NCBI GenBank assembly: GCA_051294905.1
Contig: CM119373.1
Coordinates: 35,340,001-35,404,000 of the forward strand
Reading direction: 5' to 3'
Length of the DNA stretch: 64,000 nucleotides
DNA from: Botryllus schlosseri
Lineage: Eukaryota
How positions within the stretch are numbered: position 1 is the stretch's first letter; every line of letters starts with the position of its first letter. The position numbers and the translations under genes were made by a program. The notes under the pieces are model-generated. The model ran no database searches. It was given only the letters and a program-made list of their open reading frames with translations, and was not told where the DNA came from. Shown here in pieces: positions 294 through 58,156 of this stretch.

Positions 294-522
294 GGTGCAG
301 ATAATTGTATAATTGTAATTGTATAATTTGGGTTTTTGAATGACTATGCCCAAGAATTATTGTATGTTGATTTGGATTATAGCTTTGGATTTCATGCTGG
401 GACTGCACACCATCGAACTATCCTTCTCTTAAAATCACCCTTTTCCCCCAATTCAAACAAGCGGTGCTCGATGTATCATTCGTATGGTATCGCTCTTCTA
501 TTTTCACATGATGGTGTCAATA

Positions 523-2115
523 ATGGATGTTGTGAGTAGCTTGCCAGATGAAATGTGGTTGAAGATTCTCGAATACCTTCCACTTCATGACCGTTTTGAA
601 TGGGTCAAACTTACGAAAAAAAGGTTATTTCACCTTGCTGGAGACATATCTGCAGTCCAAGATCTCGATTTTCTCGGATGTAGTTATGTATCGAGCGATC
701 AGTTTTTGAAAATAATCAATCGTTCGACGGACAGTGTGAGATTTTTGTCCTTCCGGGACTGCACATGGCTCTCGAATCAAATCTGCACCACCATGCCGAG
801 ATTGAAAAATCTTGATACACTGGATATACTGGGGTGTTTCTTGAGTAGCGAAACGTTGCACAGTCTACTCCACGCTACGCGTTCCATAAAATGATTGGCT
901 CTATCCACTACCGAACTGGTCATGAAAGATTTTTGTCTGCGGCAGTCAAAACACGAATTGTCACTTCTGGTCTTACATGTAGAATTGCTTCACGATCCCG
1001 GAAAACTCGGCTGGTTTGAAACCAGAACGGTGTTAAAGAATTTTATTAAGACATGTTGTTATTCTAAACCACATTGCATTTCAGTCCAAACTCTCAAGTA
1101 TTTGCCTTTAGATCGTTTTGAAGACATATTCATCGAGACAAATCTTGCTGTTCATAGAGACTCCACCCAGCGAGTGATGCGGGGGGCTTGTGATAAAGCT
1201 TACCATAATCAGATACTGATTGCAGAGACTTTACACAGATATGACAGTCCTCTGTCGGCCGGTTGCTTAGATGATGCCCGGGTGCTCTTTCTTCCTATGC
1301 CGGGATGGAGGCATGGGAGTATGCACGCATCATGTTATTGTGAAGGAATATACCTGCCTGTTGAACTACATGAACTGGAGTATCTTATTTGCTCACGGGA
1401 CGTATATGGTGATGGTACTAGTCCAGATACTGCTGAGGGAGTTTTGCAAAATTGTAGTATTCCGAAACTGACACATCGGGACTTGGGCAGACGGTGCGTT
1501 TCTTATTTTGGTCACGCCGAGGCATTCCCGGGTGTATGCAAGAAATTACCATCTTTCACAAACCTCGTTGAGCTTAATGTGTGTGGGCTGGATTTGAATG
1601 CTAACATGTTTCTATTAGCGATTATGGACATGAAACATTTGAAGGGTTTGTCTTTTTCGCTCCATCTTCCTATTCAATCTGATCCGGATCCTGAACAAGA
1701 CATAATGAATTTCACAACTAAGACATGAGACACGGATGAAAGTTGCAGGTATTCGATGTTTTTATCGAAGTTGGTGAAAAATTTCCCGGATTTGGAAAAG
1801 TTGGAAATAAGTTGTAGCATGGATGCCCGAAAATGCGTTGCTGTCAGTGATTTGGAACCGATTGGGATTCTGGGCAAACTTTGTTATCTATCTCTACATG
1901 GATTCATTTTGGACGATGTAGATCAGCTTGCTCAAATTCTATCCAAATGCATGAAAATATCATCATTGGATCTTGGCCACTTTGAGACTGATGTTGCCCA
2001 TGATTTTTCAGAGTGTTTTGCTTCGTTACGCCATCTCACTTATCTACGACTTGCCCATGATGATTTGGAGTCTGTATCGAAATTCAACGATTTTCACATG
2101 AGTACGTATCTGTAG
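523..2115 (+). pseudogene. F-box/LRR (FBXL18-like) pseudogene, type A
   Basis: F-box LPDEMWLKILEYLPLHDR. In-frame TGA at 892-894 (AGA in paralogs) and 1726-1728 (GGA in 28530 copy). Splice acceptor mutated to ttttcAC at 506-507. 3' end deleted at about 2103, fused to spacer sequence. Confidence 0.9.
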
Positions 2116-5073: not shown

Positions 5074-6969
5074 ATGATGGTGTCAATAATGGATGTTGTG
5101 AGTAGCTTGCCAGATGAAATGTGGTTGAAGATTCTCGAATACCTTCCACTTCATGACCGTTTTGAATGGGTCAAACTTACGAACAAAAGGTTATTTCACC
5201 TTGCTGGAGACATATCTGCAGTCCAAGATCTCGATTTTCACGGCTGTAGTTACATATCGAGCGATCAGTTTTTGAAAATAATCGATCGTTCAAAAGACAG
5301 TGTGAGATATTTATCTTTCCGGGACTGTCCTTGGCTCTCGAATCAAATCTGCACCACCATGCCAAGATTGAGAAATCTTGTAACACTGGATATACTAGGG
5401 TGTTTCTTGAGTAGCGAAACATTGCACAGTCTACTCCGTGCTACGCACTGCCTAAAAAGGTTGGCTCTATCCACTACGGAACGGGTCATGGGAGATTTTT
5501 GTCGGCTACAGCCAAAGTGTGGATTGTCACTTCAAGTATTGCATGTAGAATTTCTTGAAGATCCCGAAACATTCTACAGGTTCAATTCCAGTATGGCGCT
5601 AAAGAATTTTATCAAGAATTTTTGTCATCCAAAACCACAGTGCGTGTCAGTTCAAACGACCAAGGATTGGATTCTTTTTGATTCTAGGGATATTTTCATA
5701 GAGCCATGTCTTGACGTTTATCGAGACTTCAGCCAATTAGTGACGAGGAAAGATTATACTGAAATGTATCAAAATCATTTACATGTTGCCGTTGCTTTAC
5801 ATCAAGATAACAGTGCTCTGACGACGGGTTGCTTAGATAAAGCCAGGGTACTTTGTTTCCCTAATTGGTTGACAGAACTCGATTTGTTTGCAACTTGTTG
5901 TTGTGAAGGACGTCCCCTCCCTCACACTCTATATGAACTTGAGTATCTGGCTTGCTCAATCGTCAATTATCATCCTGTTCTAGGCCGTTCTGCCGAAGAT
6001 GTTTTACTAAATCGTTGCATTCCTAATCTCACCCATCTAGACTTGGGTAGATGGCGGCGGTATTCTGGTGTCACCAAGGGTATATGCAGGAAATTACCTT
6101 TTTTTACAAACCTTGTTGAGCTGAATGTGTGTGGGCTGGACTTGGATGCTAACATGCTCCTATTTGCAATTAAGGGCATGAAGCATTTGAAGGGTTTGTC
6201 GTTTTTGCTACATACTCCTTTACAATGTGACCATGATCCAAAGCAGAATCTAGTGAATTTTACGGCAACTGAGACAAGGGACACAGATGCGAATTGCAGA
6301 TATTCGATATTTTTGTCAAAATTGGTGAAAACTTTCCCAGATTTTGAGAAGTTGGAAATGATGTGTAGCATGGATGCCAGAAAATGCGTTGCTGTCAGTG
6401 ATTTGGAACCGATTGGGATACTGGCCAAACTTCGTTATCTATCTCTACATAGATTTCCCTTGGACGATGTAGATCAGCTTACGAAAATCCTATCCAAGAG
6501 CACGAAAATAGGATCATTGGATCTCGGTCACTTCGAGACTAAGGATGTCTGTGATTTTTCAAGGTGTTTTGCTTCATTACACAATCTCGTTTATCTACGA
6601 CTTGCACATGATGATTTGGAGTCTGTCTCAAAATTCAAAGATTTGCACACGAGTAGAAATCTTCAAAGATTTTCTCTATATTCGAAGTCCACCTTGTCAG
6701 CAGCGTGGATCGAGTCTTTCTTGAGACCAGTCGTTGCAACCTGTGATCTGTTTTGTATGGGACATATCCAATGTCAAAATGTGGATGAAGATGTGAAAAA
6801 GATGATTGCAAAGTACCGCAATATTTGTGAATCGAAATATCGAAACAACGTGGTATTGTCATGTAGTGATGATCGAAGCAGCCAACATCCAGTCTGTCAA
6901 AGTTGGCAGGGAAGGTCGTTTTCATCTGTTGCCACATACAGCCCATTTGACTTCCTAAAGATGCCTTGA
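5074..6969 (+). CDS. FBXL18: F-box/LRR-repeat protein, FBXL18-like, type B (intact, 631 aa; family start ATG at 5089)
   Basis: N-terminal F-box, LxxLxL repeats, family C-terminus HPVCQSWQGRSFS. Motifs resemble human FBXL18 as recalled (VRYLSFRDCPWL ~ IQQLSMAGCYWL; LQRFSLYSKSTL ~ LQRLCLVSRSGTL). The symbol is family-level and was not confirmed by a search. Confidence 0.85.
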   Translation: MMVSIMDVVSSLPDEMWLKILEYLPLHDRFEWVKLTNKRLFHLAGDISAVQDLDFHGCSYISSDQFLKIIDRSKDSVRYLSFRDCPWLSNQICTTMPRLRNLVTLDILGCFLSSETLHSLLRATHCLKRLALSTTERVMGDFCRLQPKCGLSLQVLHVEFLEDPETFYRFNSSMALKNFIKNFCHPKPQCVSVQTTKDWILFDSRDIFIEPCLDVYRDFSQLVTRKDYTEMYQNHLHVAVALHQDNSALTTGCLDKARVLCFPNWLTELDLFATCCCEGRPLPHTLYELEYLACSIVNYHPVLGRSAEDVLLNRCIPNLTHLDLGRWRRYSGVTKGICRKLPFFTNLVELNVCGLDLDANMLLFAIKGMKHLKGLSFLLHTPLQCDHDPKQNLVNFTATETRDTDANCRYSIFLSKLVKTFPDFEKLEMMCSMDARKCVAVSDLEPIGILAKLRYLSLHRFPLDDVDQLTKILSKSTKIGSLDLGHFETKDVCDFSRCFASLHNLVYLRLAHDDLESVSKFKDLHTSRNLQRFSLYSKSTLSAAWIESFLRPVVATCDLFCMGHIQCQNVDEDVKKMIAKYRNICESKYRNNVVLSCSDDRSSQHPVCQSWQGRSFSSVATYSPFDFLKMP

Positions 6970-9248: not shown

Positions 9249-11102
9249 ATGGATATTGTGAGCAGCTTGCCAGATGAAATTTGGTTGAAGATTCTCGAAT
9301 ACCTTCCACTGCATGACCGTTTTGAAAGGGTCAAATTTACAAACAAAAGGTTTTATCACCTTGCGGGAAACATATCTGGAGTCCAAGATCTCGATTTTCA
9401 CGGCTGTAGTTATGTATCGAACGATCAGTTTTTGAAAATAATCAATCGTTCAAAGGACAGTGTGAGATTTTTGTCGTTTCGGGACTGTACTTGGTTCTCG
9501 AATCAAATCTGCACCACCATGCCGAGATTGGAAAATCTTGTTACACTGGATGTATTGGGTTGTTTCTTGAGTAGCGAAACATTACACAGTCTACTTGGTG
9601 CCACATGCTCCTTAAAAAGACTGGCTCTATCCATTACGGAACCGGTCATGACAGATTTTTGTCTCTTGAAGTCAAAACGCAGATTGTCACTTCGAGTCTT
9701 GCATGTGGAATTGCTTCACGATCCCAAAACTCTCTATGGTAGCGTAAGCCAAATCATGGTGTTGAGTGATTTTATTAATACATGCTGTCACATGCCGCAC
9801 TGCGTTTCAGTCCAAACGCCGAAGTATATACTTCTCGATGATTTTAAAAACATTATGATTGAGGCAAATCCTGCGATTGATCGTGACTCCATCCAAATGG
9901 TGACGAGGGCAGCTTGTGATGAAACTTATCTAAATCGGTTACTGATTGCCGTTGCTTTACATAGGGATGTGAGTTCTCTGTCGGTTGGTTGCTTAGATGA
10001 ATCGCGATTACTCTGCCTTCCTATGCAGATAAGACATGAGAACTTACTCGCATCTGAACTACATACGCATTTTTTTCCCCCGCGGGACGAATATGTTGAT
10101 GATCCAGATTCTGCTGAGGCAGTTTTGTTAAATTGCTGGATCCCAAAACTGAGACATCTAAACATCGACAGATATTGTAGTTTTGATTTTGGTGTCATTG
10201 ATGTATCTCCTCGTATATGCAAGAAACTACCAACTTTCACAAACCTTGTTGAGCTCAATGTATGTGGGCTGGATTTGCATGCTAACATGCTTCTATTAGC
10301 GATTATGGATATGGAACATTTGAAGGGTTTGTCTTTTTCGCTCCATCTTCCTAAACAATGTGAGCTGGATCCAGGGCAGGATGTGTGGAATTATAAAGCT
10401 GAGACAATAGACGCCGATGAAGAAAGTTGCAGATATTCGATATTTTTGTCGAAATTGGTGAACAATTTCCCGGATTTGAAAAAGCTTGAAATGAAGTGTA
10501 GCGAACATGCCCGAAAATTCGTTTCTGTCAGTGAATTGGAACCAATCGGGATACTGGGCCAACTTCGCCATCTATCTCTACACAGATTCATTTTGGACGA
10601 TGTAGATCAGCTTGCGCAAATCCTATCCAAATGCATGAAAATATCATCATTGGATCTTGGTCACTTTGAGACTGATGTTGCCCATGATTTTTCAGAGTGT
10701 TTTGCTTCGTTACGCCATCTCACTTATCTACGACTTGCCCATGATGACTTGGACGGTGTATCGAAATTCCACGATTTGCACATGAGTAGCAATCTTCGAA
10801 GATTCACTTTTTATTCAGATTGCGCATTGTCAGCAGCGTGGATCGAGTCATTTCTGGGACCGGTTGTTGCAACTTGTGATCTGTTCTGTATGTGCCATAT
10901 CGAATGTCAATATGTGAATGCGGCTGTGAAAAAGTTGATTGAAAAGTACCGGAAGCTTTGTGAATCAAAATATCGTAACAATGTGGTGTTGTCATGCAGT
11001 AATGAACTTGTCAGCCAACATCCAGTGTGTCAAAGTTGGCAGGCACGTTCGTTCTCTACTGTTGCCATGTGCAGCCCTTTTGACTTCGTAAAGAGACCAT
11101 GA
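9249..11102 (+). CDS. FBXL18: F-box/LRR-repeat protein, FBXL18-like, type C (intact, 617 aa)
   Basis: Uninterrupted ORF with F-box, LRRs and conserved C-terminus; in-frame internal deletion after NLLAS. Confidence 0.85.
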   Translation: MDIVSSLPDEIWLKILEYLPLHDRFERVKFTNKRFYHLAGNISGVQDLDFHGCSYVSNDQFLKIINRSKDSVRFLSFRDCTWFSNQICTTMPRLENLVTLDVLGCFLSSETLHSLLGATCSLKRLALSITEPVMTDFCLLKSKRRLSLRVLHVELLHDPKTLYGSVSQIMVLSDFINTCCHMPHCVSVQTPKYILLDDFKNIMIEANPAIDRDSIQMVTRAACDETYLNRLLIAVALHRDVSSLSVGCLDESRLLCLPMQIRHENLLASELHTHFFPPRDEYVDDPDSAEAVLLNCWIPKLRHLNIDRYCSFDFGVIDVSPRICKKLPTFTNLVELNVCGLDLHANMLLLAIMDMEHLKGLSFSLHLPKQCELDPGQDVWNYKAETIDADEESCRYSIFLSKLVNNFPDLKKLEMKCSEHARKFVSVSELEPIGILGQLRHLSLHRFILDDVDQLAQILSKCMKISSLDLGHFETDVAHDFSECFASLRHLTYLRLAHDDLDGVSKFHDLHMSSNLRRFTFYSDCALSAAWIESFLGPVVATCDLFCMCHIECQYVNAAVKKLIEKYRKLCESKYRNNVVLSCSNELVSQHPVCQSWQARSFSTVAMCSPFDFVKRP

Positions 11103-11924
11103 CTGTGAATGGTGCCATAACTTGACGTCATATTTCTGTTTAGAATTTTTTTTTTCAGCTTTCATCTGAACTTCGAAATGAATATAAAATTGATTTCATT
11201 TACCGGTACCTCTTGCAACTTATCCATGGTGCTCAGAACCTCGGTCATACGAGCTAGTTTCCCACCATGTCAATTGTATGACATACCGTAGTTTGGAATT
11301 TAAGAAGGATCCACAGTAAAGTAGGTAATTCGATAGAAATATCTACACCCCTCCTGATATCACAAAATATGATACCATGTCATCCACGTTGTGGATTTGA
11401 ATTGAATTCCTGATGGTTGTGTTTACCTCCATGTCGTTATTTATTCCTGCATTAGTTGAAAAATTGAATTCTGTTGATCATAAGGTAATAATAATTGTAT
11501 ACAATATCAGCTATTGCGTTTGTACATATTGCTGTCTTGAGGAAGGCTTCTGTAGCCTAAGCGTACATTTGACTTTCCGTTTTTTGTTTTACATACCTAA
11601 ATGTCATTTCAGCTTTAATCTCGCACTATTGACATATTCAACACCGTGCTTGTTATCAGATGATTATGGTATAATATATTGGCATTTTCACTACCATAGC
11701 TGCAAATAATTTACTGCCATGCCATCATGTTGTATTTTTTCAGCACTGCTTTTGTTCCTCGATTAAATTATTGGATTACACTTCTGGATTTAGTTCGTTT
11801 GTTGCCATTATTGTACATATGACTTGGCTTTGTTGCAATTCATACAAATGAACAGTTCTCAAGTTATCATCTGTATCGCCCTTCATTTTCAGATAATAGT
11901 TTTGTAGTGTTAACTTGTTACCAC

Positions 11925-12197
11925 ATTTTCATCAGGCTGCAGCGTGGATCCAGTCATTTCTGGGATCTGTCGTTGCAACCTGGGACCTATCGAATGTGAA
12001 AAGATTTTCGCGAATGTGAGAAAGGTCATGGCAAAATACCGGAATATTTGCAAAACGAAGTATCGTAGCAGTGTGGTGTTGTCGTGAAGGTGCAATGATT
12101 ATCATCTCAGCCAATATCCAGTATGTCAATGTTGGCAATGAAGGTCATTTACAACTGTGGCCATATACTAACCTTTTGACTTCTAAATATGCCTCGG
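11925..12197 (+). pseudogene. C-terminal relic of F-box/LRR paralog
   Basis: Near-identical to 18-293, with an extra 16-bp deletion. Confidence 0.8.
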
Positions 12198-12425
12198 GTG
12201 CAGATAATTGTATAATTGTAATTGTATAATTTGGGTTTTTGAATGACTATGCCCAAGAATTATTGTATGTTGATTTGGATTATAGCTTTGGATTTCATGC
12301 TGGGACTGCACACCATCGAACTATCCTTCTCTTAAAATCTCCCTTTTCCCCCAATTCAAACAAGCGGTGCTCGATGTATCATTCGAATGGTATCCCTCTT
12401 CTATTTTCAGATGATGGTGTCAATA

Positions 12426-14263
12426 ATGGATGTTGTGAGTAGCTTGCCAGATGAAATGTGGTTGAAGATTCTCGAATACCTTCCACTTCATGACCGTTTT
12501 GAATGGGTCAAACTTACGAAAAAAAGGTTATTTCACCTTGCTGGAGACATATCTGCAGTCCAAGATCTCGATTTTCTCGGATGTAGTTATGTATCGAGCG
12601 ATCAGTTTTTGAAAATAATCAATCGTTCGACGGACAGTGTGAGATTTTTGTCCTTCCGGGACTGCACATGGCTCTCGAATCAAATCTGCACCACCATGCC
12701 GAGATTGAAAAATCTTGATACACTGGATATACTGGGGTGTTTCTTGAGTAGCGAAACGTTGCACAGTCTACTCCACGCTACGCGTTCCATAAAATGATTG
12801 GCTCTATCCACTACCGAACTGGTCATGAAAGATTTTTGTCTGCGGCAGTCAAAGTGTGGATTGTCACTTCAAGTATTGCATGTAGAATTTCTTGAAGATC
12901 CCGAAACATTCTACAGGTTCAATTCCAGTATGGCGCTAAAGAATTTTATCAAGAATTTTTGTCATCCAAAACCACAGTGCGTGTCAGTTCAAACGACCAA
13001 GGATTGGATTCTTTTTGATTCTAGGGATATTTTCATAGAGCCATGTCTTGACGTTTATCGAGACTTCAGCCAATTAGTGACGAGGAAAGATTATACTGAA
13101 ATGTATCAAAATCATTTACATGTTGCCGTTGCTTTACATCAAGATAACAGTGCTCTGACGACGGGTTGCTTAGATAAAGCCAGGGTACTTTGTTTCCCTA
13201 ATTGGTTGACAGAACTCGATTTGTTTGCAACTTGTTGTTGTGAAGGACGTCCCCTCCCTCACACTCTATATGAACTTGAGTATCTGGCTTGCTCAATCGT
13301 CAATTATCATCCTGTTCTAGGCCGTTCTGCCGAAGATGTTTTACTAAATCGTTGCATTCCTAATCTCACCCATCTAGACTTGGGTAGATGGCGGCGGTAT
13401 TCTGGTGTCACCAAGGGTATATGCAGGAAATTACCTTTTTTTACAAACCTTGTTGAGCTGAATGTGTGTGGGCTGGACTTGGATGCTAACATGCTCCTAT
13501 TTGCAATTAAGGGCATGAAGCATTTGAAGGGTTTGTCGTTTTTGCTACATACTCCTTTACAATGTGACCATGATCCAAAGCAGAATCTACTGAATTTTAC
13601 GGCAACTGAGACAAGGGACACTGATGCGAGTTGCAGATATTCGATATTTTTGTTACAATTGGTGAAAATTTTCGCAGATCTTGAGAAGTTGGAAATGATG
13701 TGTAGCATGGATGCCAGAAAATGCGTTGCTGTCAGTGATTTGGAACCAATTGGAATGCTGGCCAAACTTCGTTATCTATCTCTACATAGATTTCCCTTGG
13801 ACGATGTAGATCAGCTTACGAAAATCCTATCCAAGAGCACGAAAATAGGATCATTGGATCTCGGTCACTTCGAGACTGATGATGTCTGTGATTTTTCAAG
13901 GTGTTTTGCTTCATTACGCAATCTCGTTTATCTACGACTTGCACATGATGATTTGGAGTCAGTCTCAAAATTCAAAGATTTGCACATGAGTAGAAATCAT
14001 TAAAGATTAACCTTGTCTTTAAATTCCTTTTTGTCAGCAGTGTGGATCGAGTCGTTTCTGGGACTGGTCGTTGCAACGTGCGATCTGTTTTGTATGTGCC
14101 ATATCACATGTAGAAATGAGGATGCAGAAATTGAAAAGGTCATTGAAAGATACCGCAATATTTGTGAATCGAAATACCGTAAAAGGATGATATTGTCATG
14201 CAGTGATGACCGTATCAGTCACCATCCAGTTTGTCAAAGTTGGGAGGGACGGTCATTTTCGTC
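12426..14263 (+). pseudogene. Chimeric F-box/LRR pseudogene (A 5' / B middle / K-like 3')
   Basis: 5' end matches the 523 copy including TGA at 12795-12797; from 12854 matches the 5074 copy; CAA>TAA at 14001-14003; 3' end matches 44370-44640 and then loses the stop codon by deletion. Confidence 0.9.
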
Positions 14264-16739
14264 TGATTTCATTATACGTCTTGCGTTTTTCCATATATAT
14301 CAGAACGATATTGACGTTGGCGTACTATCCATGATGCCAATTGTATGACATGATTCATAATTCGAGATGGATCAAATGTGAAGAGTAGGTAGTTGAATAG
14401 AAATTTTCACAACCCTTCACAACTGATGGAGAATATGATCCGCAATAGTTCACTTAAGGCTAATTTTTTATTCATGTGATGGTCCTGTAGCTTACATGAC
14501 AAAATATGATTTACCTCATTGGCAGTTGATAGATTTATGTTGATTTTATGGTATTAACCACTATCTACATTCTACAGTATCAGCTACCATTATTGCAGTT
14601 GTTATGTATTAAGGCAGCTGTCTTCTTTCATAGATTTATGCACATAAATTTCATTCCTTGTAAAAGTGCAAGCGGTCGTTTTGTGTTGGGTGGAACACTC
14701 TAGATGTTATGGAGATCCTTTGCCAGATTATAGTCCAAATGCTGATGGCAAAGCATTAAACATTTCCTTTGTTGTTTGGATCATTGTAAGTTAAGAGTCA
14801 TTCATAATGGATTTTTATTTCGAATTTTTACACTGTGTGTTAGTATTGATTTTCACATTCCATTTCATACATGAACACTGTTATGTTCAATATTTCTCTT
14901 ATTTCTGGTACCACCTGTTGTTTCTGTTTCTGACTGTTTGCGTATTTGACATCTTGCTAGTTGTCACATGCAATGGGAATGATATATCATGATTCTAGCT
15001 AATGGTACCTTGCAATATCATTTAATAGGGCATGACTTTGAATCAGCCTGAAAAACTCCTCTGACAAGACGATGTCTGCAATCTCAAAATATTTGAAAAT
15101 GGTGTCTTCAAATCTTTATCGTAATACTGAATATTCAAGTCACAAAATTGCAGATTCTGTGTATTGCTCGAGGGGCTGAATTACATTGACACAGTATTAG
15201 CTCATAAGAAACACTTCAAATATGAAAATCCTTTATGAAATTAAGTTCAAATACTGAGGCAAACGCAAAGAACTTGGTCCACGGTATTGGTGTCACCGCA
15301 GATATGGTATTAAATAAGTTGACCATCTTGAGTGATGGAATTTTATTTGCAATGTTGGCACCGTGTTATAGTGTTCATTTCTACATTCTATATCATTCAT
15401 GAACACGGTAGTGTTAATTAGTGCTGTTATTTCAACCCTCGGCTTCTGTTTTGACTAGAAATTTGGCGCCTTACCTGTTACTGGTATGATTCATCATTAT
15501 TCTACCTGGCGGTACCTTGCAGTATTATCATGTATGGCTTGAATTTGATGTAGTCTAAAAACTCCTATACAGTAACTAAAATGTGTCTTCAAACCGTGAT
15601 CCTTCTCCTTAACATTCAAGACGTAAAATTGCAGTTTTTCTATATTGCTCGGACTGCTTATCTACAATTTCACAGTATTAACTCTCATTCAAAGCTATGT
15701 GGAAAAATTCATAAATTACTCAACCTAATTACTGTAAAAGTGTCGTGTGCTAATTAAGCACCAGATTGTGTCAGTGTGATTTCATCAGTTCATCATGCCA
15801 AATGCAAAGCACCGCATTGTCTTTCCGTACTTTCCTTCCCTGTGACTAATATTTTATTCATGACTCCTGACTTAGCATTGTGATATCAAGTTTTCTTTGG
15901 TGTTAATTGTTGACATTGTGATAACGCCTATTATATTTCTTTGTTGACAGAAGCTATTAAGTTAGATGAGTCTATGAAGGAAAACTTTCTTCTGAATTGA
16001 ATAAGTCTGTGGCATTTGCTAATCAAGGATCGTTTGGACCAGTGCCGGAGTGTTAGTAAAGCAGGTAAACTACATTTAATTATCGTGACTCCAGATAGGC
16101 CATTGGCCCTTGTCCTTAGTTCTACAGAGCTGCCTAGCAGTACTGCCTTATTCAGAGTATTGTAAAGTTAGCTTTGTAGAGCTGGGCTACTTGTCGGCGA
16201 TGCCCGTGCTTTACCTCCCTATTGGATATTGTCACTCCCTATGTATATGTAATTAGTAGTGTAGTGTCACAGGCCGCCCTGACTTCTGTATATTCAGTTA
16301 TTAAATATGTGCCAGTTCTTGTGTAATCTGTATGACCTATTTAGTCATCATCATTTAGTACATCAGGTAAACTACATTTAATAATCGTGATTCCTGATAG
16401 CCCATTTGTCCTGTGGTCTGCCTTATTCAGATTTTCGTAAAGTTAGCTTTGTAAAGCTTGCCTGTGTTTGACCTCCCTTTGTATATGTATGTAGTGTCAC
16501 AGGCCACCCGGCTTCGGTATTTTCAGTTATTAAATTCGTGCCAGTTCTTGTGTAATCTGTATAACTTATTTAGTCATTACATGTCCTTAAAGCTGGTTCC
16601 GTAGGGGATATTTCTGTAAGGTTGTATCGAACATTTGGCTACTTCTATCAATATTAGCTTTTCCACCGTTGAAATATTTCAGATGCAAAACCTAGACTAC
16701 ACTACTAATTTTAACCTCGAGCAGAGGTGCAGTACAATG

Positions 16740-17179
16740 CAGGGTTATGAACAAGGATTTCAACATTCGAATCTGAATCAAGTAATAGTGTCAATGCGAT
16801 CGAGTCGGGTAGTGAGAGATCATTTTTTTCGACTATTGAAATTTCACGATCCATGCTACTAAAGAGTTATTTTATCAATGAATTTATAGTTTCGATAGTA
16901 ATTTCAAAAGTGGAAGGTTTCAAATCTCAATTAATCGTGTCATAGACGTATGCTAAAGATTAAACATGTATTACGAAGCTATAAATTACCCTCATGTGGT
17001 GTACAATTGGTATTATATTCTTTGCTGCGATTGCATAGGAGGTAGCTACATATTTGAACTTTCCACATCTTTCGTACTGGTATGACATCACAATTAGCGA
17101 TATTCAAATACTCGACTCGTAGCCTAGTAGGGCCTACTCGATTCAGAATTGAATCACTCAAGTATTTGATTTCGCCCTA
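16740..17179 (+). mobile_element. Ancient intronic hAT-type MITE with residual TSD
   Basis: Flanks gtacaatg (16732-16739) and gtaccaag (17180-17187) match at 6/8; right end gattcagaattgaatcactcaagtatttgatttcgcccta matches the reverse complement of the 36797 end. Confidence 0.7.
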
Positions 17180-17261
17180 GTACCAAGTGAAGATGATTGT
17201 GTAAAAGTATTAGTCCAAAACACGCTAAATTGTACGATATGGATTTTTGAATGACTACGCT

Positions 17262-21628: not shown

Positions 21629-22815
21629 CTGTGAATGGTGCCATAACTTGACGTCATATTTCTGTTCATAATTTTGTTTTTTTAGTTTTTATCTGAACTG
21701 CTATTTTATTTGAAATACATATAAAAGTGATTTCATTTACCGGTACCTCTTTCAATTTATCCATCCTCGGTCATGCAGGCTAACTTCCCACCATGTCAAT
21801 TGTATGACACGGTCCATAATTTTTAAAAAGATCCAAAGTGAAGGAGGTAGTTCGATGGAAATATCTACACCTCTCCTGACATCACCAAATACGATCCGGT
21901 GTGATCCACTTTGTGAATTTTAATTGAATTTCTGATGGTCGTGTTTAGCTCCATGCCATTAATTTATTTATTTCAGCATTAGTAGTAAAATTGAATTCTG
22001 TTGATCCTAAGGTTATGATAACTGTATACAATATCAGATATTGCGGTTGTATATATCGCTGTCTTGAGGAACGCTTCTGTAGCCTATGTATACATTTGGC
22101 TCTTCGTTTTTTTATTTTTATACCTAAATGTCATTTGAAGGGAGTGAGTGAGTAAGTAGGTGTCTGGATTTGGGTGAAAAGCTTCAATGTTATAAAACAT
22201 CGTTTGCCAAATGAAGCTCACATACTGGGGTAAAGCAAAGAACCATGTCCTCATTGTTGGTTTCACCTCATATAGGGTGTTAAATTGATGTTCATGCCCC
22301 CCCCCCCTTCCCCCCGTGCATGAATAATTTTTATTTACTATGGTTAAATTGTTCAGTGTTCAATAGTATTCATTAACGCATTTAATTTCATACCACAGTC
22401 TTGTGTTGATTTTTGCGGTTTTTTTCATTTGCGTTTCTTTGTCTCACACTATTAACGCATTCGAGACCGTGTTTTTTATCAAATGCATATGGTATAATAT
22501 ATTAGTATTTTCTTACTATAGCTGCAAATAAATTACTGCCATCATGTCGTATTGTATTCACACTCCTTTTGTTCGTCGCTTCAATTTTCTGATTACAGCT
22601 CAGGATTTAGTTCGTGGGTTGCCATTATTGTGCATATAATGATTGTGTTTATTACACACTAAATCGCACAAACTTGAAAATCATCCCTTTGTTGCAATTC
22701 ATACAAATGCAGAGTTATCATGTCCATTTTATTCATACTGTATCGCCCTTCATTTTCAGACGTTAGTTTTTTAGTTTTAACTTGTTACCACTTTTTCATC
22801 TGTAAGGATTTGACA

Positions 22816-23079
22816 ATGGATATTGTGAGCAGGTTGCCTGATGAAATGTGGACAAAGATTCTCGATTATCTCCCAGTACACGACCGTCTCGAATGGGTGA
22901 AATACACAAACAAAAGATTTTTTCAGCTTGCTGGAGATGTCTCTGCTGTCCAAAATCTCGATTTTCGTGGACGTAGTTATGTGTCCAATAGCATGTTTCA
23001 GAAAATACTCAATTGTTCAAAAGACAGTGTGAGATTTTTATCTTTCCGGGACTGCGCTTGGCTCTCGAATGAAATTTGC
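22816..23079 (+). pseudogene. N-terminal fragment (F-box plus about 2 LRRs)
   Basis: MDIVSRLPDEMWTKILDYLPVHDRLEW...NEIC, then fused to spacer sequence homologous to about 61512. Confidence 0.85.
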
Positions 23080-28019: not shown

Positions 28020-28302
28020 TCAGGCTGCAGCGTGCATCCAGTCATTTCTGGGACCTGTCGTTGCAACCTGCCATCTGTTATGTATGGGACCTATCGAATG
28101 TGAAAAGATTTTCGCGAATGTGAGAAAGGTCATGGCAAAATACCGGAATATTTGCAAAACGAAGTATCGTAGCAGTGTGGTGTTGTCGTGGAAGGTGCAA
28201 TGATTATCATCTCAGCCAATATCCAGTATGTCAATGTTGGCAATGAAGGTCATTTACAACTGTGGCCATATACTAACCTTTTGACTTCTAAATATGCCTC
28301 GG
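28020..28302 (+). pseudogene. C-terminal relic of F-box/LRR paralog
   Basis: Near-identical to 18-293. Confidence 0.8.
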
Positions 28303-42833: not shown

Positions 42834-44685
42834 ATGATGGATGTTGTGAGCAGCTTGCCAGATGAAATGTGGGTCAGCATTCTGGAATACCTACCCGTAC
42901 ATGACCGTCTAGAATGGGTGAAATTTACAAACAAAAGATTTCTTCAGCTTGCTGGCGATATTCGTACGGTCCGAACTCTAGATTTTGAAGGATGTAGTTA
43001 TGTATCAAGCGATCAGTTCTTGACGATAATCAATCGCTCAAAAGACATAGTGAGATTTTTATCTTTCCGGGATTGTGCTTGGTTCCCGAATCAAATCTGC
43101 ACCACAATTCCAAGATTGAAAAATCTTGTGACGTTGGATATATTAGGGTGTTTTTTGAGTAGCGAAACGTTACGCAGTCTACTCCGCGCCACACGCTCCA
43201 TAAAAAGATTGGCTCTATCCACTACAGAACTGGTCATGAAAGATTTTTGTCGCTTGCAGTCAAAGCGTGGATTATCGCTTCGAGTCTTACATGTGGAATT
43301 ACTTCACGATACCGAAACAATCTGTAGTCAGGAAACCAGAACGGTGTTAAAGGATTTTATCAAGACATGCTGTCATTCAAAACCACACTGCATTTCCGTT
43401 AAAACGCCCAAGCATTTGCCTCAGTACGATTTTCAAGGTATTCTAATAGATGCAAACTGTATGGCGCATCGGGACTTTGTCCACAGTGTGATGAGGGAAG
43501 ATTATGCTGGAACATACCAAAATCAGATGCTGATTGCCTTTGCTTTACATCGTCACGGCAGTGAACTGTCGTCAGGTTGCTTAGATGAAGCCCGGGTGCT
43601 GTGTCTTCCTATGCTGTTAAGACATAAGAGCGTATGCGCATTTTGTTATTGTGAAGGGCAATGCCTGCCAATAACATTACATGAGCTGGAGTATCTTATT
43701 TGCTCGCGTGATGAGTATTTAGATTGTGGAAATTACTGCGATCCAAATTCTGTCAAGGCAGTTTTGCAAAGAAGCCGCATTCCGAAGCTCACTCATCTAG
43801 ACTTTGGAAGACGGTTCGATTCTTGTTTTGGATCCCTCGGTTGCATATTCAGTAAATTACCCTCTTTCACAAACCTTGTCGAACTGAATGTTAGTGGGTT
43901 GGACTCGGATGCTAACATGCTTCTGGTTGCGATTATGGGCATGAAACATTTGAACGGTTTGTCATTCTCACTTCACCTCCCTTCACAATGTGACCCAGAT
44001 GCAAAGCAGACTGTAATAAATATAACGAAAACTGAGACAAAGGATGCAAATTGCGGATACTCGATACTTCTATCAAAATTGGTGACGAATTTCCCAGGTT
44101 TGAAAAAGTTGGAACTGACCTGTAGCGTGGATGCTAGAAAATGTGTTACTGTCAGTGATCTGAATCCAATTGGAATGCTGACCAAACTTCGTTATCTTTC
44201 TCTACATAGATTTCCATTGGATAATGTAGATCAGCTTGCACAGATCCTATCCACCAACATAAAGCTAGCATCATTGGATCTCGGTCACTTTGAGACTGGT
44301 GTTGTCGTTGATTTTTCAGATTGTTTTGCATCGCTTGATAATCTCGTCTATCTACGACTTGCCCATGAGTAGAAATCTTCAAAGATTCACCTTGTATTCA
44401 AAGTCCTCTTTGTCAGCAGCGTGGATCGAGTCGTTTCTGGGACCGGTTGTTGCAACGTGCGATCTGTTTTGTATGTGCCATATCGCCTGTAGAAATGTGG
44501 ATGCAGAAATTGAAAAGGTCATTGAAAGATACCGCAATATTTGTGAATCGAAATACAGTAACAGGGTGATATTGTCATGCAGTGATGATCGTATCAGCCA
44601 CCATCCAGTGTGTCAAAGTTGGGAGGGACGGTCATTTTCGTCCGTCGCCACATACAGCCCTTTTGACTTTCTAAAGAAACCTTGA
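42834..44685 (+). pseudogene. F-box/LRR paralog type K, frameshifted by a 41-bp deletion
   Basis: Open for 512 codons; deletion between two CATGA motifs (junction 44364-44368); C-terminal frame intact to 44685. Confidence 0.88.
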
Positions 44686-47120
44686 GTGGAATCATACCGA
44701 TATCATTGTTCTGTTTTGAATTGCGTTCTGCTTGAGATGTGATCGAAATGTTATTTCCTTTACTGTGAATGTAAATCTGATTTCATGATAACTCTTGCGT
44801 TTTTCCATATATATCAGAACGATATTGACGCTGGCGTACTATCCATGATGCCAATTGTATGACATGATTCATAATTCGAGATGGATCAAATGTGAAGAGT
44901 AGGTAGTTGAATCGAAATTTTCATAACCCTCCACAACTGATGACGAATATGATTTGCAGTAGTTCACTTAAGGCTAGATTTTTATTCTTCTCCTGATGGC
45001 CCTATAAGTTCCGTGTCAAAATATGATTCACTGTAACGGCAGTTGATAAATTTATGTTAGTCTTATGGTATTAACCACTACCTACAATATCAGCTACCGG
45101 TATTGCAGTTGTGATGCATTCAGGTGGCTGTGTCTGAAACGCTAACAATTGTGTCGCATGCACATTTGACATCTTTTATAGATTCAGTCACATAAATTTC
45201 ATTCTGTGTATGAATGCAAATGGGCGTTTTGTTCTGGGTGGATCACTTTACATATTATGGAGATCCTTTGCCAAATTGAAGTCCAAATGCTGATGGCAAA
45301 GCATTGAACATTTCTTTTGTTGTTTGTATCATTATAAGTTAACAGTCATTCATAATGGATTTTTATTTGCAAATTTTACACTGCGTGATAGTATTGATTT
45401 CCACATTCCACTTCATACATGAACACTGTTATGTTCAATATTTCTCTTATTTTTGGTACCACCTGTTGTTTCTGTTTCTGACTGTTTGCGTATTTGACAT
45501 CTTGCTAGTTATCACATGCAATGGGAATGATATATCATGATTCTAGCTAATGGTACCTTGCAATATCATTAAATAGGGCATGACTTTGATTCAGACTGAA
45601 AAACTCCTCTGACAAGACGATGTCTGCAATCTCAAAATATTTGAAAATGGTGTCTTCAAATCTTGATCGTAATACTGAATATTCAAGTCACAAAATTGCA
45701 GATTCTGTGTATTGCTCGGGAGGCTGAATTACATTGACACAGTATTAACTCTCATTAGCTCATAAGAAACACTTCAAATTTGAATATCCTTTATGAAATT
45801 AAGTTCAAATACTGAGGCAAACGCAAAGAACATGGTCCACGGTATTGGTGTCACCGCAGATATGGTATTAAATAAGTTGACCATCTTGAGTGATGGAATT
45901 TCATTTGCAATGTTGACACCGTGTGATAGTGTTGATTTCTACATTCTACTTCATTCATGAACACTGTAGTGTTGATTATTGCTGTTATTTCCGCCCGCGG
46001 CTTCTGTTTTGACTAGAAATTTGGCAACCTACCAGTTACTGGTATGATTCATCATTATTCTACCTGGCGGTACCTTGCAGTATTATCAAGTATGGCTTGA
46101 TTTTGATGTAGTGTAAAAACTCCTATACAGTAACTAAAAAGTGTCTTCAAACCGTGATCCTTCTCCTTGACATTCAAGACGCAAAATTGCAGTTTTTCTA
46201 TATTGCTCGGACTGCTTATCTACAATTACACAGTATTAACTCTCATTCAAAGCTAGGTGGAAAAATTCATAAATTACTCAGCCTAATTACTGTATAAGTG
46301 ACTTATGCTAATTCAGCACCAGAATGCGTCAGTGTGATTTCATCAGTTCATCATGCCAAATGCAAAGCACTGCATTGTCTTTCCATACTTTCCTTCCCTG
46401 TGACTAATATTTTATTGATGACTCCTGACTTGGCATTGTGATATCAAGTTTTCTTTGGTGTTAATTGTTGACATTGTGAAAACAGCTAATATTTTTCTTT
46501 GTTGACAGAAGCTACTGAGTTAGATGAGTCTACGAAGGAGAACTTTCTTCTGAATTGAATAAGTCTGTGGCATTTGCTAATCAAGGATCGTTTGGACCAG
46601 TGCCGAAGTGTTAGTAAAGCAGGTAAACTACATTTAATAATCGTGACTCCAGATAGGCCATTGTCCTTTGTTCTACAGAGCTGCCTAGTAGTACTGCCTT
46701 TTTCAGAGTATTGTAAAGTTAGCTTTGTAGTGCTGGGCTACTTGTCAGCGATGGCCGTGCTTCACCTCCTTATTGGATATTGTGACTCCCTATGTATATA
46801 TATATGTAGTAGTGTAGTGTCACAGGCCGCCCTGACTGCTGTATATTCAGTTGTTAAATATGTGCCAGATCTTGTGTAATCTGTATGACCTATTTAGTCA
46901 TTACATGTCCCTAAATCTGGTTCCGTAGGTGGTATTTCTCTAAGGTTGTGTCGAACATTTGGCTACTAACTGGCATTGATAATATTTTTATCACTTTGGA
47001 GTATTTCACAGTTAAAATCTAGATTACAGTGCTGGTACTAATTTTCATCTCGAGCAAAGGCACAGTAGATAGGCACAGATAGGGCGGGGCTCAAGGATTC
47101 GAATCGTCGAATTTGAATCT

Positions 47121-53944: not shown

Positions 53945-56900
53945 ATGTCTGAAGAAGTTGTTAAGGTTCTTAAGCAACAATTAGAACAGCAGCGGGAATA
54001 ATTAGAACAGCAGCGTAAAGAGTTGGACGAACAGAAGGCACATAACGAACAGCAGATGAAAGCATGGATGGAGACACTGCGTCAAATATCTTCTCAGGCG
54101 GTCTCCACTGCGTCGGTCAGCAATGTGTCAGTTCAGCCATTTGCGCCATTTGACTCAACAACAGAACTCTGGACTGACTATTGGGAACGCTTCTGTACAT
54201 TCGTGAGCGCACACTCTGTGCCGAATGATGAAGTGGCCCATGTATTCTTAACGAATCAACGCGCAGTGGTCTACAAGATGTTGCAGAACATAGCTGCGCA
54301 GCAGGCCGATCCTAAGAAGATCAATGATCTTTCCATGGAAGAAATTAACTCTTTTTTGAAAGACCACTATGATCCGAAGCAATTTGTGGTTAGAGAACGC
54401 TACAAATTTTGGAGTGATATGAAGCGCAAACCTGGTGAAACCATACCAGAATTAGCTGCTCGTATCAGGCAAGACGCGATCACATGTGACTTTTCTTCAA
54501 TTAAAAATCCGTTGGACGAAGCGATGTCCACGCGATTTATGTGTTCGGTGGGAAATGAAGCTGTTCTATAGGCTGTATTTAAACTGAAAAGCGATTCTTT
54601 GAACTTCGAGACTGTTGTCAAAACAGCAACTGATACGGAAGATGCCGCCAAAGTAGCAAAAGAAACCGTTTATGGTTCAAAATCCGAAGACCCGCTTCAA
54701 ACTAACGTGGTAAAGTCTTCTTATACAAAGAAAAGTAAAGGAGACGCCCAGAACTCCAAGAGTCGGGTTGCTGGATATGAAGGGGAAGGAAGAAACCTCT
54801 CTGAAAAGGCGCGTTTCCGATGTGACAAGTGCGGACACTCTCCTGATGAATGCAAATATGTAGATGCTGTCTGTCATTACTGCGACAAAAGAGGTCACAT
54901 TCAACCAGCATGTCGTATCAAAAAGAAAGATAGGTTGACGGAGAAAGGCGTTCGTAAGAACCGTCGCGTTAGAAGTGTTAAACACACACGGTCGTATCCA
55001 GAAATCGAAATCGACGTGCATATCAATAAAGACATCCAATCATTTGAGTTGGATACTGGCGCGAGAGAAAATTTCGTGTCCAAAGACAGATGGATCGCTC
55101 TGGGAAGACCTGCTATGGTGAATGCTGAGTAACTGAGTTCGAATCTGCATCCTTGCATAAACTGAACACTCTAGGTACATTCACACCTAAGAATGTTTCA
55201 CTGACAGATGTGAACGATCGGTCAGAAATATCCGATTTCTCATTTATAGTTACCGATATACCGAATTTGAACTTGATAGGCCGTAGTGGAATATTGAAGT
55301 TGGGAATTTCAATCGATGCTCTGCTATACGGTAACAGTGTTGTAAAATCGCTTTCCAATGTTGATTTTTCGGAATTGGCCAAACGCTGTGAGGATATCAG
55401 TAACGAATTCCCAGAACTTTTCAAATCTGAATTGGGTTGTTTAAAGGATGTTAAGTTAGACATTCAATTTAAAAATGATGCGAAACCTATTTTCTGTAAA
55501 TATCGCCCAGTACCGTTGCTATCCGTGATGAGTTATCCCAAGCGTATGATGTAGGGATAGCCAAATGTGTGCGGCAACCGGTCGATTTTAATGATTATGG
55601 TACGCCTGTTGTTCCAATTCGTAAACGATCGCTTCCTGGTAGTAAATCGGGAAAGATTCGTGTGTGCGGCGATTATTCTGTTACAGTTGATTCGCAACTT
55701 GAAACGCATAGACAACCGATTCCACTCGCGGAAGAGCTCATGCAGAAATTGGGCGGGGGTTATGGTTTTACGAAGATTGACTTGGCTGATGCCTATAACC
55801 AAGTTCAATTGACTGAAGAGAGTCAAAAGAGACTTGCTCTCAGCACGCATCGTGGTGTCTTGCTGCAAATGAGATTACCGTTTGGAATTTCTTCAGCACC
55901 AGGTTATTTCACTGAATTCATGAATCAGCTGACTGCCGACTTGAAAGGTGTAGCTGTTTACCTGGATGACATTTTGGTCACATTAATAATCTCCGTGCGT
56001 TATTGAAGAGACTTCAAGATAAAGGTCTCCGATGCCGAAGAGAAAAGTGCACATTCGCACAACCGTCAGTCGAATACCTAGGTCACAAATTATCAAGTGC
56101 CGGTATTTCCAAAGGTTCGAAAGTGGAGGCAGTGTTGAAAATGCCTGCTCCATCTAACGTTTCTGGTCTCAAATCATTTCTGGGCCAAGTACAATTCTAC
56201 AGTAAATTTTTACCCAATCTGTCCGCGGTGACGGAACCGTTACACCGTCTTACAAGAAAGGGAATCCCGTGGTTTTGGGGTAAAGATGAGCAAGATTCAT
56301 TCGAAGAATTGAAGAAAATGCTATGTGCAGATTTGCTCCTAGTTCACTTTGATCCAACAAAGAAGTTAGGATTATCATGTGACGCTTCGGAAGTAGGAAT
56401 TGGTTGCTTACTTTTTCACCGTTCTGAAGATGGTTCTGAGAAGCCGATTTCCTACATGTCGAAAACGTTGACGGAAACTCAACGAAAGTATAGTCAGATT
56501 CACAAAGATGCTTTGGCTATCATTTTTGCTCTCCAGAAGTATCATCAATACTTATATGGAAGAAAGTTTATATTGGTTACTGACCATAAACCTCTACTGG
56601 CATTGTTTGGACCAAGCAAAGCGATACCGGCCCTCGCAGCAAATCGTCTGGCAAGATGGGGACTGACTTTGAACCAATACGATTATGATATTGAATATCG
56701 TAATACAAAGCAACACGGTAATGCTGATGCATTGAGTCGACTTCCGTTCAGTCATGACTCCGTATTTGACAAAGGGGAGGAAGAGGAAAATATGAACATT
56801 GTTAGCACAGTACGTACTGTGAGCCAACAGATTAATCCTTCTGATCCTGGTATATTGGCAAAAGAATCCAGCAAAGATCCTGTCATTTCTGCTGTGATGA

Positions 56901-58156
56901 GATACACCAGAGTGGGCTGGCCAGAAAATGTTGCCAGCACCAAAGATCAAGGATATTCGTTAGAAGATTTCTGTAAGATATCCACATGTTTATCTGTTGA
57001 AAACGGATGTTTGTTTTCAGGAGCGAGAATCGTAATTCCCTCGAGTCTGCAAAGAAAGGTGTTGGATATTCTTCATTTGGGACATTTTGGAATGCAACGT
57101 ATGAAGCAACTTGCTCGTAGTGCTGTGTATTGGCCGCGAATGGACAATGATATTGTGGACATGTGTCACAGATGTGTCTCATGCTGTGAAAATCAGAACG
57201 CTCCTAAGAAGGCGAGTATCCATCCTTGGATGTTACCTGAGAAGCCGTGGATGAGAGTTCATGTCGACCATGCAATCGAATTCATGGGAACCAATTGGCT
57301 CGTATTGACGGACTCGTATTCTAAATATCCTTGCATCCACCCGACCAATTCCGTTTCAAGCAAGGAAACTATCGGATTACTAGAACAGGACTTTGCACAT
57401 TTTGGATATCCGTTTACCATTGTGTCTGACGATGCAAGTACGTTCAAGTCTGAAGAGTTTCAGAAATGGTGTAAAAAAAGAGGAATTATCCACCTTTCGG
57501 GTGCACCGTATCACCCATCTACGAATGGCGCCGCAGAAAAGCTGGTTGACTCATTCAAACGCGCACTACGCAAATCAAGTTTGCCGGCCAAGGCCGCATT
57601 ACAGGAATTCCTCATGTTGTACAGGAGAACGCCGCTTGCAAGTGGGTTATCTCCGAGTCAGCTTCTCAATAGCAGACAAATTCGTACGATGATTGACACG
57701 CTACTGCCATCTCCAGCTCATGCAGCTCAAGGCAAGCAAGTGAGAGAAGTTGAGAAGCAAGTAAAGGCTTCAGTCAATCGATTCACGGTTGGCACACCTT
57801 GTTATGCTCTGTATTATGGGCCGAAGAAGAATAAAAAGCCCAAATGGGTACCTGCGACAGTTACCAAGGTATTTGGTTCTCGCAGTGTCAATGTTATGGT
57901 TCATCCGCGTGGTCCTACGTGGAGAAGACACATTGATCAACTTCGACCAAGGTATGGAATTGAAGAAGACAGCGAGCCTGGCATCACACCTGATGTACCT
58001 GCTTTTAATTATCAAAGGGTAGTAAGCCCTCCGAGAAACAATATCGTGGCAATGCGTCATGCCTCTCCGGAAGTCCATGAATTACCGGAATATGGACCTC
58101 ATAACCCGAGACGTTCCAAACGAACTCGTAAACCGAGAGTTATTCTTGATTTGTAA
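53945..58156 (+). pseudogene. gag-pol polyprotein, disrupted
   Basis: Coiled-coil gag, two Cys/His knuckles (second CHYCDKRGHIQPAC), protease LDTGA, RT YLDD, RNase H CDAS, integrase HHCC and D..D..E. Stops at 53999 and 54569; frameshifts at about 55128 and 55517; deletion at about 55980. Confidence 0.92.

What the first reader, a model, noticed from the sequence alone, without database searches (positions are those of the whole stretch)
12426..14263. Three-way mosaic gene with a crossover resolvable to 4 bp at the conserved/hypervariable boundary
Type A reads ...tgtctgcggcagtcaaaacacg, type B ...tgtcggctacagccaaagtgtgg, and this copy ...tgtctgcggcagtcaaagtgtgg. The switch therefore lies in caaa at 12850-12853. 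Upstream is near-identical to the 523 copy, including its TGA. About 730 bp downstream appears identical to 5514-6250, the entire variable block. The 3' end and following 2 kb match the type K unit (44370-46900). Inference: ectopic recombination in the conserved flanks swaps the whole variable cassette, which would generate new specificities.
Basis: partly seen in the sequence, partly recalled or inferred. Interest (0 to 1): 0.7.

Follow-up and report, generated by a model that had tools for sequence, protein, structure and literature searches.

The report
Mosaic F-box pseudogene from paralog exchange
One broken copy in a long head-to-tail row of F-box/leucine-rich-repeat genes is a real patchwork of at least four neighbouring copies, made by ordinary recombination between repeats. 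It is a clear example of a well-known process, not a new mechanism.

Summary
The focal copy (12387-14263) has no differences from copy A (gene at 484) over 12411-12853. That stretch includes a TGA stop found only in these two of 28 copies. The focal copy has no differences from copy B (gene at 5074) over 12850-13589 (740 bp). The switch lies in caaa at 12850-12853 (37 A-type then 230 B-type informative sites; 0 of 200 permutations matched).

The "three-way" reading is incomplete. Sequence fetched from outside the window shows two better parents. Copy P (about 51 kb upstream) is 99.2% identical to the focal copy's upstream 1.5 kb. Copy Q is about 97% identical to its 3' end and 3 kb of downstream flank, against 90.6% for type K.

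The focal unit sits where P and Q sit in an older segmental duplication, and it is exactly one unit shorter. I read it as an in-register P/Q-type fusion, later overwritten by short gene-conversion tracts from or with A and B. These tracts stop where similarity collapses.

The focal copy is dead: two in-frame stops and a 3' deletion. It therefore makes no new specificity itself. Across the family, switch points are enriched at the left edge of the variable block and depleted inside it, so cassette-like exchange is plausible.

The read data could not bridge the junction.

The parts
10885..12410 (+). P-like segment. It covers the upstream flank, a remnant of a gene 3' end (11939-12205) and the first bases of the focal gene. 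It is 99.2% identical to copy P, which lies outside the window at window coordinates about -51278 to -49769, and 94.0% identical to copy A.
   Evidence: It shares a 16-bp deletion at 11980 with P only. Runs of P-type informative sites continue up to 12410.
12411..12853 (+). Tract identical to copy A (A coordinates 508-950). It encodes the F-box and the first leucine-rich repeats.
   Evidence: 0 differences in 443 bp and 35 consecutive A-type sites from 12416 to 12844. Copy A is 97.5-98% like its sister copies A2 and A3 both here and elsewhere, so this sequence is native to A.
12795..12797 (+). In-frame TGA stop, shared only with copy A (A coordinates 892-894).
   Evidence: the other 26 aligned copies have AGA, AAA or AGG at this codon.
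12850..12853 (+). A-to-B junction (caaa).
   Evidence: The last B-distinguishing site is 12849 and the first A-distinguishing site is 12854. Only this copy joins the A-type left context to the B/Q/J-type right context.
12850..13589 (+). Tract identical to copy B (B coordinates 5513-6252). It covers the whole hypervariable block, about 12905-13445.
   Evidence: 0 differences in 740 bp. B is Q-like (98-99%) on both sides of the tract and matches the focal copy at all 19 informative sites inside it.
13590..13757 (+). Cluster of 10 substitutions private to the focal copy, directly after the right end of the B tract.
   Evidence: Three of the states occur in none of the 28 copies. Unexplained.
13590..14263 (+). 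Q-like 3' part of the gene (96.6% to Q).
14001..14003 (+). TAA stop private to the focal copy.
   Evidence: Q, B, J and K all have CAA here.
14263..14264 (+). Site of a private 133-bp deletion relative to Q and K. It removes the last dozen or so codons and the stop. The junction shows TCTGA microhomology.
14262..17260 (+). Downstream flank. It is 96.7% identical to the flank of copy Q (outside the window); type K at 44776-46901 is 90.6% identical.
484..2115 (+). Copy A, a pseudogene with several stops and a truncated 3' end. It is the partner for tract 12411-12853.
5074..6969 (+). Copy B, an intact 631-aa F-box/LRR gene. It is the partner for tract 12850-13589.
42834..46901 (+). It is a more distant relative of the Q-type 3' end and flank.

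Best explanation
The window lies inside a cluster of about 165 kb. The cluster holds at least 28 intronless F-box/LRR (FBXL18-like) genes and pseudogenes in one orientation.

The focal unit occupies the position that two adjacent paralogs, P and Q, hold in an older copy of the same multi-unit block. It is shorter by exactly one unit. Its backbone is therefore an in-register fusion of an A/P-type 5' half with a B/Q-type 3' half. Such a fusion is made by unequal homologous recombination in the conserved 5' region.

Short non-allelic gene-conversion tracts were laid on this backbone. An older one involves P (10885 to about 12410, 0.8% diverged). Two very recent ones involve A (12411-12853) and B (12850-13589), each with no differences.

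Both recent tracts abut the junction because usable similarity ends there. To the right of 12853, A is only 60-74% like the focal copy. In the 35 bp left of 12850, B has 8 mismatches. The exchange with A also copied a stop codon.

What is shown: the mosaic, its breakpoints, the one-unit deletion and the broken state of the gene. What is inferred: the order of events, the direction of the B exchange, and homology-limited tract ends.
For: Block structure: X1-P-Q, X2-A-B and X3-focal are parallel blocks. The alignment offset shifts from 62790 to 58104 (4686 bp), against a P-to-Q start spacing of 4676 bp. Relative to A/B it shifts from 11881 to 7327.

A and B keep their own flanks and their usual 97.5-99% similarity to their sister copies, so the transfer was non-reciprocal.

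No differences in 1183 bp contrasts with 1-1.4% divergence for the youngest whole-unit duplicates.

Mosaicism is general in the family. The nearest neighbour differs between the 5', variable and 3' regions in more than half of the 28 copies. A second significant exchange of the variable block has its left breakpoint at 12859-12867, in the A2/A3/A triplet. Switch points are enriched at the left edge and depleted inside the block.

Synonymous divergence is lower in the conserved 5' part (0.38) than in the variable block (0.63). That fits homogenisation of the flanks.
Against: No read or contig was shown to bridge 12850.

The P, A, B and Q segments are contiguous, with no backbone left between them. 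One multi-template repair event would explain that equally well.

The direction of the B exchange is unresolved. There are 12 shared derived sites in 740 bp, which lies between the B-private rate (4 in 401 bp) and the focal-private rate (11 in 401 bp).

The cluster of 10 private substitutions at 13590-13757 is not explained.

The regions used for the breakpoint statistics were defined after looking at the data.
Confidence: 0.62

Rival explanations
1. One complex repair event. A break in the ancestor of the focal copy was repaired by synthesis that copied from several paralogs in turn (P, then A, then B, then back to the Q-type backbone). The switch between templates happened at very short matches such as caaa. 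This is template switching during synthesis-dependent strand annealing or break-induced replication.
For: The four segments are collinear and contiguous. The A|B junction has only 4 bp of identity between sites that lie 5 bp apart. A cluster of private substitutions sits next to the tract end, as error-prone synthesis might leave.
Against: The P-like segment has about 0.8% differences, mostly private to P, whereas the A and B tracts have none in 1183 bp. The expected number at the P rate is about 4, giving P about 0.015. This suggests more than one time layer. The sequence around the junction is 85-90% similar between types, so ordinary homologous exchange is also possible.
Confidence: 0.17
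2. Assembly artefact. Either the consensus of the focal unit was contaminated by reads from A and B, or an allelic fusion haplotype was wrongly placed in tandem beside X2-A-B.
For: No listed contig bridges 12850. DNA run X1 holds only 74% of the words and has no contig at 98% or better over 13517-13718. Perfect identity of the tracts is what mis-polishing would give.
Against: A false join would carry A's upstream and B's downstream flanks for kilobases. Instead the 1.2-kb patch sits in a distinct P/Q-like context. In X1 a 288-nt contig begins exactly at 12850 and runs without difference to 13137. That is as expected if a second left context meets the B/Q/J context there, and in the assembly only the focal copy supplies such a context. 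The depth of that shared block (21.7) is about twice that of focal-unique sequence (13.2). Similar mosaics occur throughout the family. B's downstream flank is unlike the focal one, which argues against simple allelism.
Confidence: 0.08
3. An adaptive cassette-exchange system. Conserved flanks act as recombination handles so that whole variable blocks are moved between copies. Broken copies serve as reservoirs that can donate blocks to intact receptor genes such as B, creating new substrate specificities.
For: The tract covers the whole variable block. B, the only intact partner, carries the identical block. Breakpoints cluster at the left edge. dN/dS rises to 0.6-0.95 in the block against 0.23 in the 5' part.
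Against: The focal product is dead. The direction of transfer is unknown, and the weak evidence leans towards B as donor. There is no enrichment at the right edge. dN/dS stays below 1. The breakpoint pattern follows from similarity-dependence alone. No expression data were obtained.
Confidence: 0.13

Closest known systems
Non-allelic gene conversion and chimeric genes in tandem duplicates (human CYP21A2/CYP21A1P in the RCCX module; Lepore-type globin and opsin fusions). From general knowledge; PMC3843699 was listed but not read.
   Same: In-register fusion of adjacent paralogs with loss of one unit. Short non-reciprocal patches copied between paralogs. A disabling mutation (here a TGA) spread from one copy to another by conversion.
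   Different: At least four partners contribute to one copy. The array has about 28 members. Here the recipient is itself a pseudogene.
Sequence exchange in clusters of plant LRR immune receptor genes (for example RPP8, PMC6771003, listed, abstract only).
   Same: Tandem LRR genes with a hypervariable recognition region, mosaic paralogs, and intergenic exchange proposed as a source of new specificities.
   Different: These are F-box/LRR ubiquitin-ligase adaptors in an animal, not NLRs. No link to immunity is shown.
Expanded, fast-evolving F-box families, including S-locus F-box arrays with genetic exchange (bioRxiv 10.1101/2025.10.28.683340, listed, abstract only) and the nematode and plant F-box expansions (general knowledge).
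   Same: A conserved F-box with a variable substrate-binding part, tandem birth-and-death evolution, and exchange between copies.
   Different: The family is intronless, FBXL18-like and restricted to one lineage. Only about five full-length relatives were found among 1.84 billion representative proteins. Its function is unknown.
Programmed cassette conversion (chicken immunoglobulin pseudo-V genes, trypanosome VSG mosaics, Anaplasma msp2; PMC11946796 listed, abstract only).
   Same: Pseudogene copies and segmental mosaics whose breakpoints lie in conserved flanks of a variable block.
   Different: There is no dedicated expression site and no sign of somatic or programmed exchange. Many copies are intact genes with their own 5' regions.

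Membership tests
F-box/LRR (FBXL) SCF substrate receptor, FBXL18-like | N-terminal F-box motif | tested here: met
   Pfam F-box scores 21.8 bits against a cut-off of 20.5 on copy B, residues 10-30. The focal 5' fragment scores 19.7 bits, just below the cut-off.
F-box/LRR (FBXL) SCF substrate receptor, FBXL18-like | LRR solenoid after the F-box, with a fold like known FBXL receptors | tested here: met
   The AlphaFold model has mean pLDDT 69 and regular strand-helix repeats. The best solved matches are TIR1, COI1, D3 and FBXL2. The best Swiss-Prot model is human FBXL18, E 1.9e-14, TM 0.59, aligned over the full length.
F-box/LRR (FBXL) SCF substrate receptor, FBXL18-like | Sequence membership in the FBXL18 LRR family | tested here: inconclusive
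   Pfam LRR_FBXL18 scores 27.1 bits against a cut-off of 27. It matches only profile positions 8-70 of 591. Identity to FBXL18 in the structural alignment is 16%.
F-box/LRR (FBXL) SCF substrate receptor, FBXL18-like | Binds Skp1 and recruits substrates | not tested
   No complex prediction or experiment was done.
Non-allelic (interlocus) gene conversion tract | A stretch identical to one paralog, flanked by sequence that is closest to other paralogs, with significant breakpoints | tested here: met
   (chi-square 256, 0 of 200 permutations as high).
Non-allelic (interlocus) gene conversion tract | Non-reciprocal: the partner copies keep their own flanks and positions | tested here: met
   A stays A2/A3-like and B stays Q-like outside and across the tracts.
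Non-allelic (interlocus) gene conversion tract | The junction is present in raw reads or in an independent assembly | tested here: inconclusive
   a contig starts exactly at 12850 and the depth ratio is about 2:1, but no listed piece bridges the junction.
Lepore-type in-register fusion by unequal crossover | The 5' flank comes from the upstream member and the 3' flank from the downstream member of an adjacent pair, with loss of one unit | tested here: met
   The upstream flank is P-like and the downstream flank Q-like. The offset shift is 4686 bp against a P-Q spacing of 4676 bp.
Lepore-type in-register fusion by unequal crossover | A single junction between two parents | tested here: not met
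   There are four segments. The original fusion point has been overwritten by the A and B tracts.
Programmed cassette diversification | One expression site fed by silent donor cassettes, with somatic exchange | tested here: not met
   At least 15 copies in the cluster are open full-length or nearly full-length genes with their own starts. Somatic exchange cannot be tested with these tools.

The most novel reading that the evidence does not exclude
The array works as a diversification system. A recombination-prone site at the left edge of the variable block (three independent breakpoints fall within 12847-12867) lets whole recognition blocks move between copies. Broken copies such as this one act as donors to intact F-box/LRR receptor genes such as B.
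Probability: 0.13. Interest if true: 0.6.

Novelty: new member of a known kind. Interest (0 to 1): 0.3.

Why it matters
This is a very well resolved natural example of how tandem gene families are reshuffled. It shows a fusion of neighbouring copies, several short conversion tracts, and a stop codon spread by conversion. It lies in a lineage-restricted F-box/LRR family whose central block evolves fast. If population data showed that variable blocks are exchanged among intact copies, the array would become an animal counterpart of plant receptor clusters. As it stands, it documents ordinary concerted and birth-and-death evolution.

Tried and rejected
Type K as the third parent was rejected. It is 90.6% identical, against about 97% for copy Q outside the window.

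A simple A-by-B unequal crossover was rejected. The focal copy has neither A's upstream flank nor B's downstream flank.

Another donor for 13590-13757 was sought among all 28 copies, and none was found.

RNA run X19 laid no reads, which is no test of expression.

Polarising the B exchange with copy J was inconclusive.

The first Viterbi mosaic run was discarded because cheap gap states favoured truncated copies. It was redone.

The X3/X1/X2 triplet was significant but messy, and it is not a clean cassette.

A protein search found one relative, and a profile search found about five full-length ones. A contig look-up for P0001 returned no DNA.

Literature searches found no description of this family.

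Full report
**Setting.** The window has no N. It carries a one-orientation row of open frames of about 600 aa, spaced every 4-5 kb, plus a Ty3/gypsy-type pol gene. The frames encode an N-terminal F-box followed by leucine-rich repeats.

An AlphaFold model of copy B (mean pLDDT 69) is a long LRR solenoid. Its best solved matches are the F-box receptors TIR1, COI1, D3 and FBXL2. Its best reviewed-protein match is human FBXL18, at TM 0.59 over the full length.

The window is G000:C3:35340001-35404000 in a 495-Mb assembly. All DNA-level relatives lie in one cluster at about 35.258-35.421 Mb. Distant full-length relatives (25-32% identity) lie on other contigs. Outside this genome the family is almost absent: one hit in the word-indexed search and about five full-length hits among 1.84 billion representatives. 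My Pfam and fold results agree on the family; I did not test the organism.

**Check of the observation.** Pairwise and multiple alignments confirm every sequence statement.
- The focal copy has no differences from copy A over 12411-12853. The first A-distinguishing site is 12854.
- It has no differences from copy B over 12850-13589, which corresponds to 5513-6252. The last B-distinguishing site on the left is 12849.
- The switch is therefore confined to caaa at 12850-12853.
- In an alignment of 28 copies, only the focal copy joins the A-type left context to the B/Q/J-type right context.
- Informative sites run 37 A-type then 230 B-type. The two-breakpoint chi-square is 256, and none of 200 permutations reaches it.
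- The TGA at 12795-12797 occurs only in A and the focal copy.
- The match to type K exists at about 90%.

**What the window alone could not show.** I fetched the rest of the cluster. Two copies upstream of the window are better parents.
- Copy P is 99.2% identical to 10885-12410, against 94.0% for A. It alone shares a 16-bp deletion with the focal copy at 11980.
- Copy Q is 96.6% identical to 13590-14263 and 96.7% to the flank 14262-17260. Over 14262-16348, Q is 97.0% identical and K 90.6%.

The copy is thus a four-segment mosaic: P-like, then A, then B, then Q-like.

**Large-scale structure.** High-identity self-alignments show three parallel blocks, X1-P-Q, X2-A-B and X3-focal, within a larger segmental duplication. 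Between the upstream and downstream halves of the focal unit, the alignment offset to block 1 drops by 4686 bp. The P-to-Q start spacing is 4676 bp. The focal unit is therefore an in-register fusion that lacks exactly one unit.

**Recent tracts.** Copy A remains 97.5-98% like its sisters A2 and A3 across the shared tract and beyond it. The tract sequence is therefore native to A, and the focal copy received it, together with the stop codon.

Copy B is 98-99% like Q on both sides of the 740-bp tract, and it matches the focal copy at all 19 informative sites within it. The direction of this exchange is unresolved. Polarising with copy J gives 12 shared derived sites in 740 bp. That lies between the B-private rate (4 in 401 bp) and the focal-private rate (11 in 401 bp).

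No differences in 1183 bp contrasts with about 0.8% for the P-like segment and 1-1.4% for the youngest whole-unit duplicates. The A and B tracts are therefore the youngest layer.

Both tracts end at the junction. The simplest reason is that similarity ends there. Beyond 12853, A is 60-74% like the focal copy. In the last 35 bp before 12850, B has 8 mismatches. This step is inference.

**State of the gene.** Read in frame, the focal copy has two stops: the TGA shared with A and a private TAA at 14001-14003. It also has a private 133-bp deletion that removes the last codons. A, P and Q are also broken. B is intact. The event therefore produced no working new receptor at this position.

Mean pairwise identity is 85-92% in the 5' part, 62-78% over about 12905-13445, and 80-88% afterwards.

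A copying-model (Viterbi) analysis of all 28 copies gave 51 supported switches, which merge into 39 events.
- The 150 bp at the left edge hold 8 events against 3.1 expected (P about 0.01).
- The block interior holds 5 against 10.2 expected (P about 0.04).
- The right edge is not enriched.

The A2/A3/A triplet shows a second significant block exchange, with its left breakpoint at 12859-12867. The nearest neighbour differs between regions in more than half of the copies. The regions were defined after seeing the data and the events are not fully independent, so this support is moderate.

Among 15 open copies, dN/dS is 0.23 in the 5' part, 0.59-0.65 in the variable block (peak 0.95), and 0.37-0.40 in the 3' part. 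Synonymous divergence is higher in the block (0.63 against 0.38). This fits purifying selection on working genes, homogenised flanks, and a relaxed or partly diversifying centre.

**Artefact check.** DNA run X1 holds 74% of the sampled words. Its contigs are short.
- One contig of 288 nt starts exactly at 12850 and matches to 13137 without difference. A graph contig that ends at that base is expected if two left contexts meet there. In the assembly only the focal copy supplies a second context.
- Its depth (21.7) is about twice that of focal-unique sequence (13.2).
- No listed piece bridges the junction, so this is indirect.
- The two bins without any contig at 98% or better (13517-13718) overlap a cluster of 10 private substitutions at 13590-13757. 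I cannot explain this cluster.

A false join is unlikely, because the 1.2-kb patch sits inside distinct P/Q-like flanks.

**Verdict.** The finding is a well-resolved instance of unequal recombination plus non-allelic gene conversion in a lineage-restricted F-box/LRR array.

Noticed in passing
window 54023-58156: A Ty3/gypsy-type retroelement is inserted in the array. It has an open 717-aa frame with RNase H and integrase domains (56003-58156) and further open frames upstream. Local G+C rises to 0.43-0.44.
   Followed up: partly
window 11939-12205 (also 19-247 and 28027-28255): All A-type units carry a remnant of about 270 bp of a gene 3' end just upstream of their start. It is about 70% like the 3' ends of other copies. 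This is a trace of an older unequal exchange or deletion.
   Followed up: partly
window 13590-13757: Ten substitutions private to the focal copy fall within 168 bp, right after the B-identical tract. Three of the states are seen in no other copy. DNA run X1 has no near-identical contig over 13517-13718.
   Followed up: partly
G000 C1:9.38-9.43 Mb, C3:23.30-23.44 Mb, C6, C8, C10, C15, C16, C169 (loci L025-L031): Distant full-length intronless relatives (25-32% protein identity, 600-720 aa) lie elsewhere in the genome, some of them in clusters of their own. The superfamily is wider than this array.
   Followed up: partly
window 22815-23079, and its duplicate outside the window at window coordinates -26579 to -26315: Solo 265-bp fragments of the 5' (F-box) end of the gene lie between full units.
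   Followed up: no
G000:C3:35327034-35327833 (outside the window): A tandem repeat with a 61-bp period was seen in the self-alignment of the cluster.
   Followed up: no
window 9249-11102: The intact copy X3, just upstream of the focal unit, is itself a significant but messy mosaic of X1 and X2, with several switches.
   Followed up: partly
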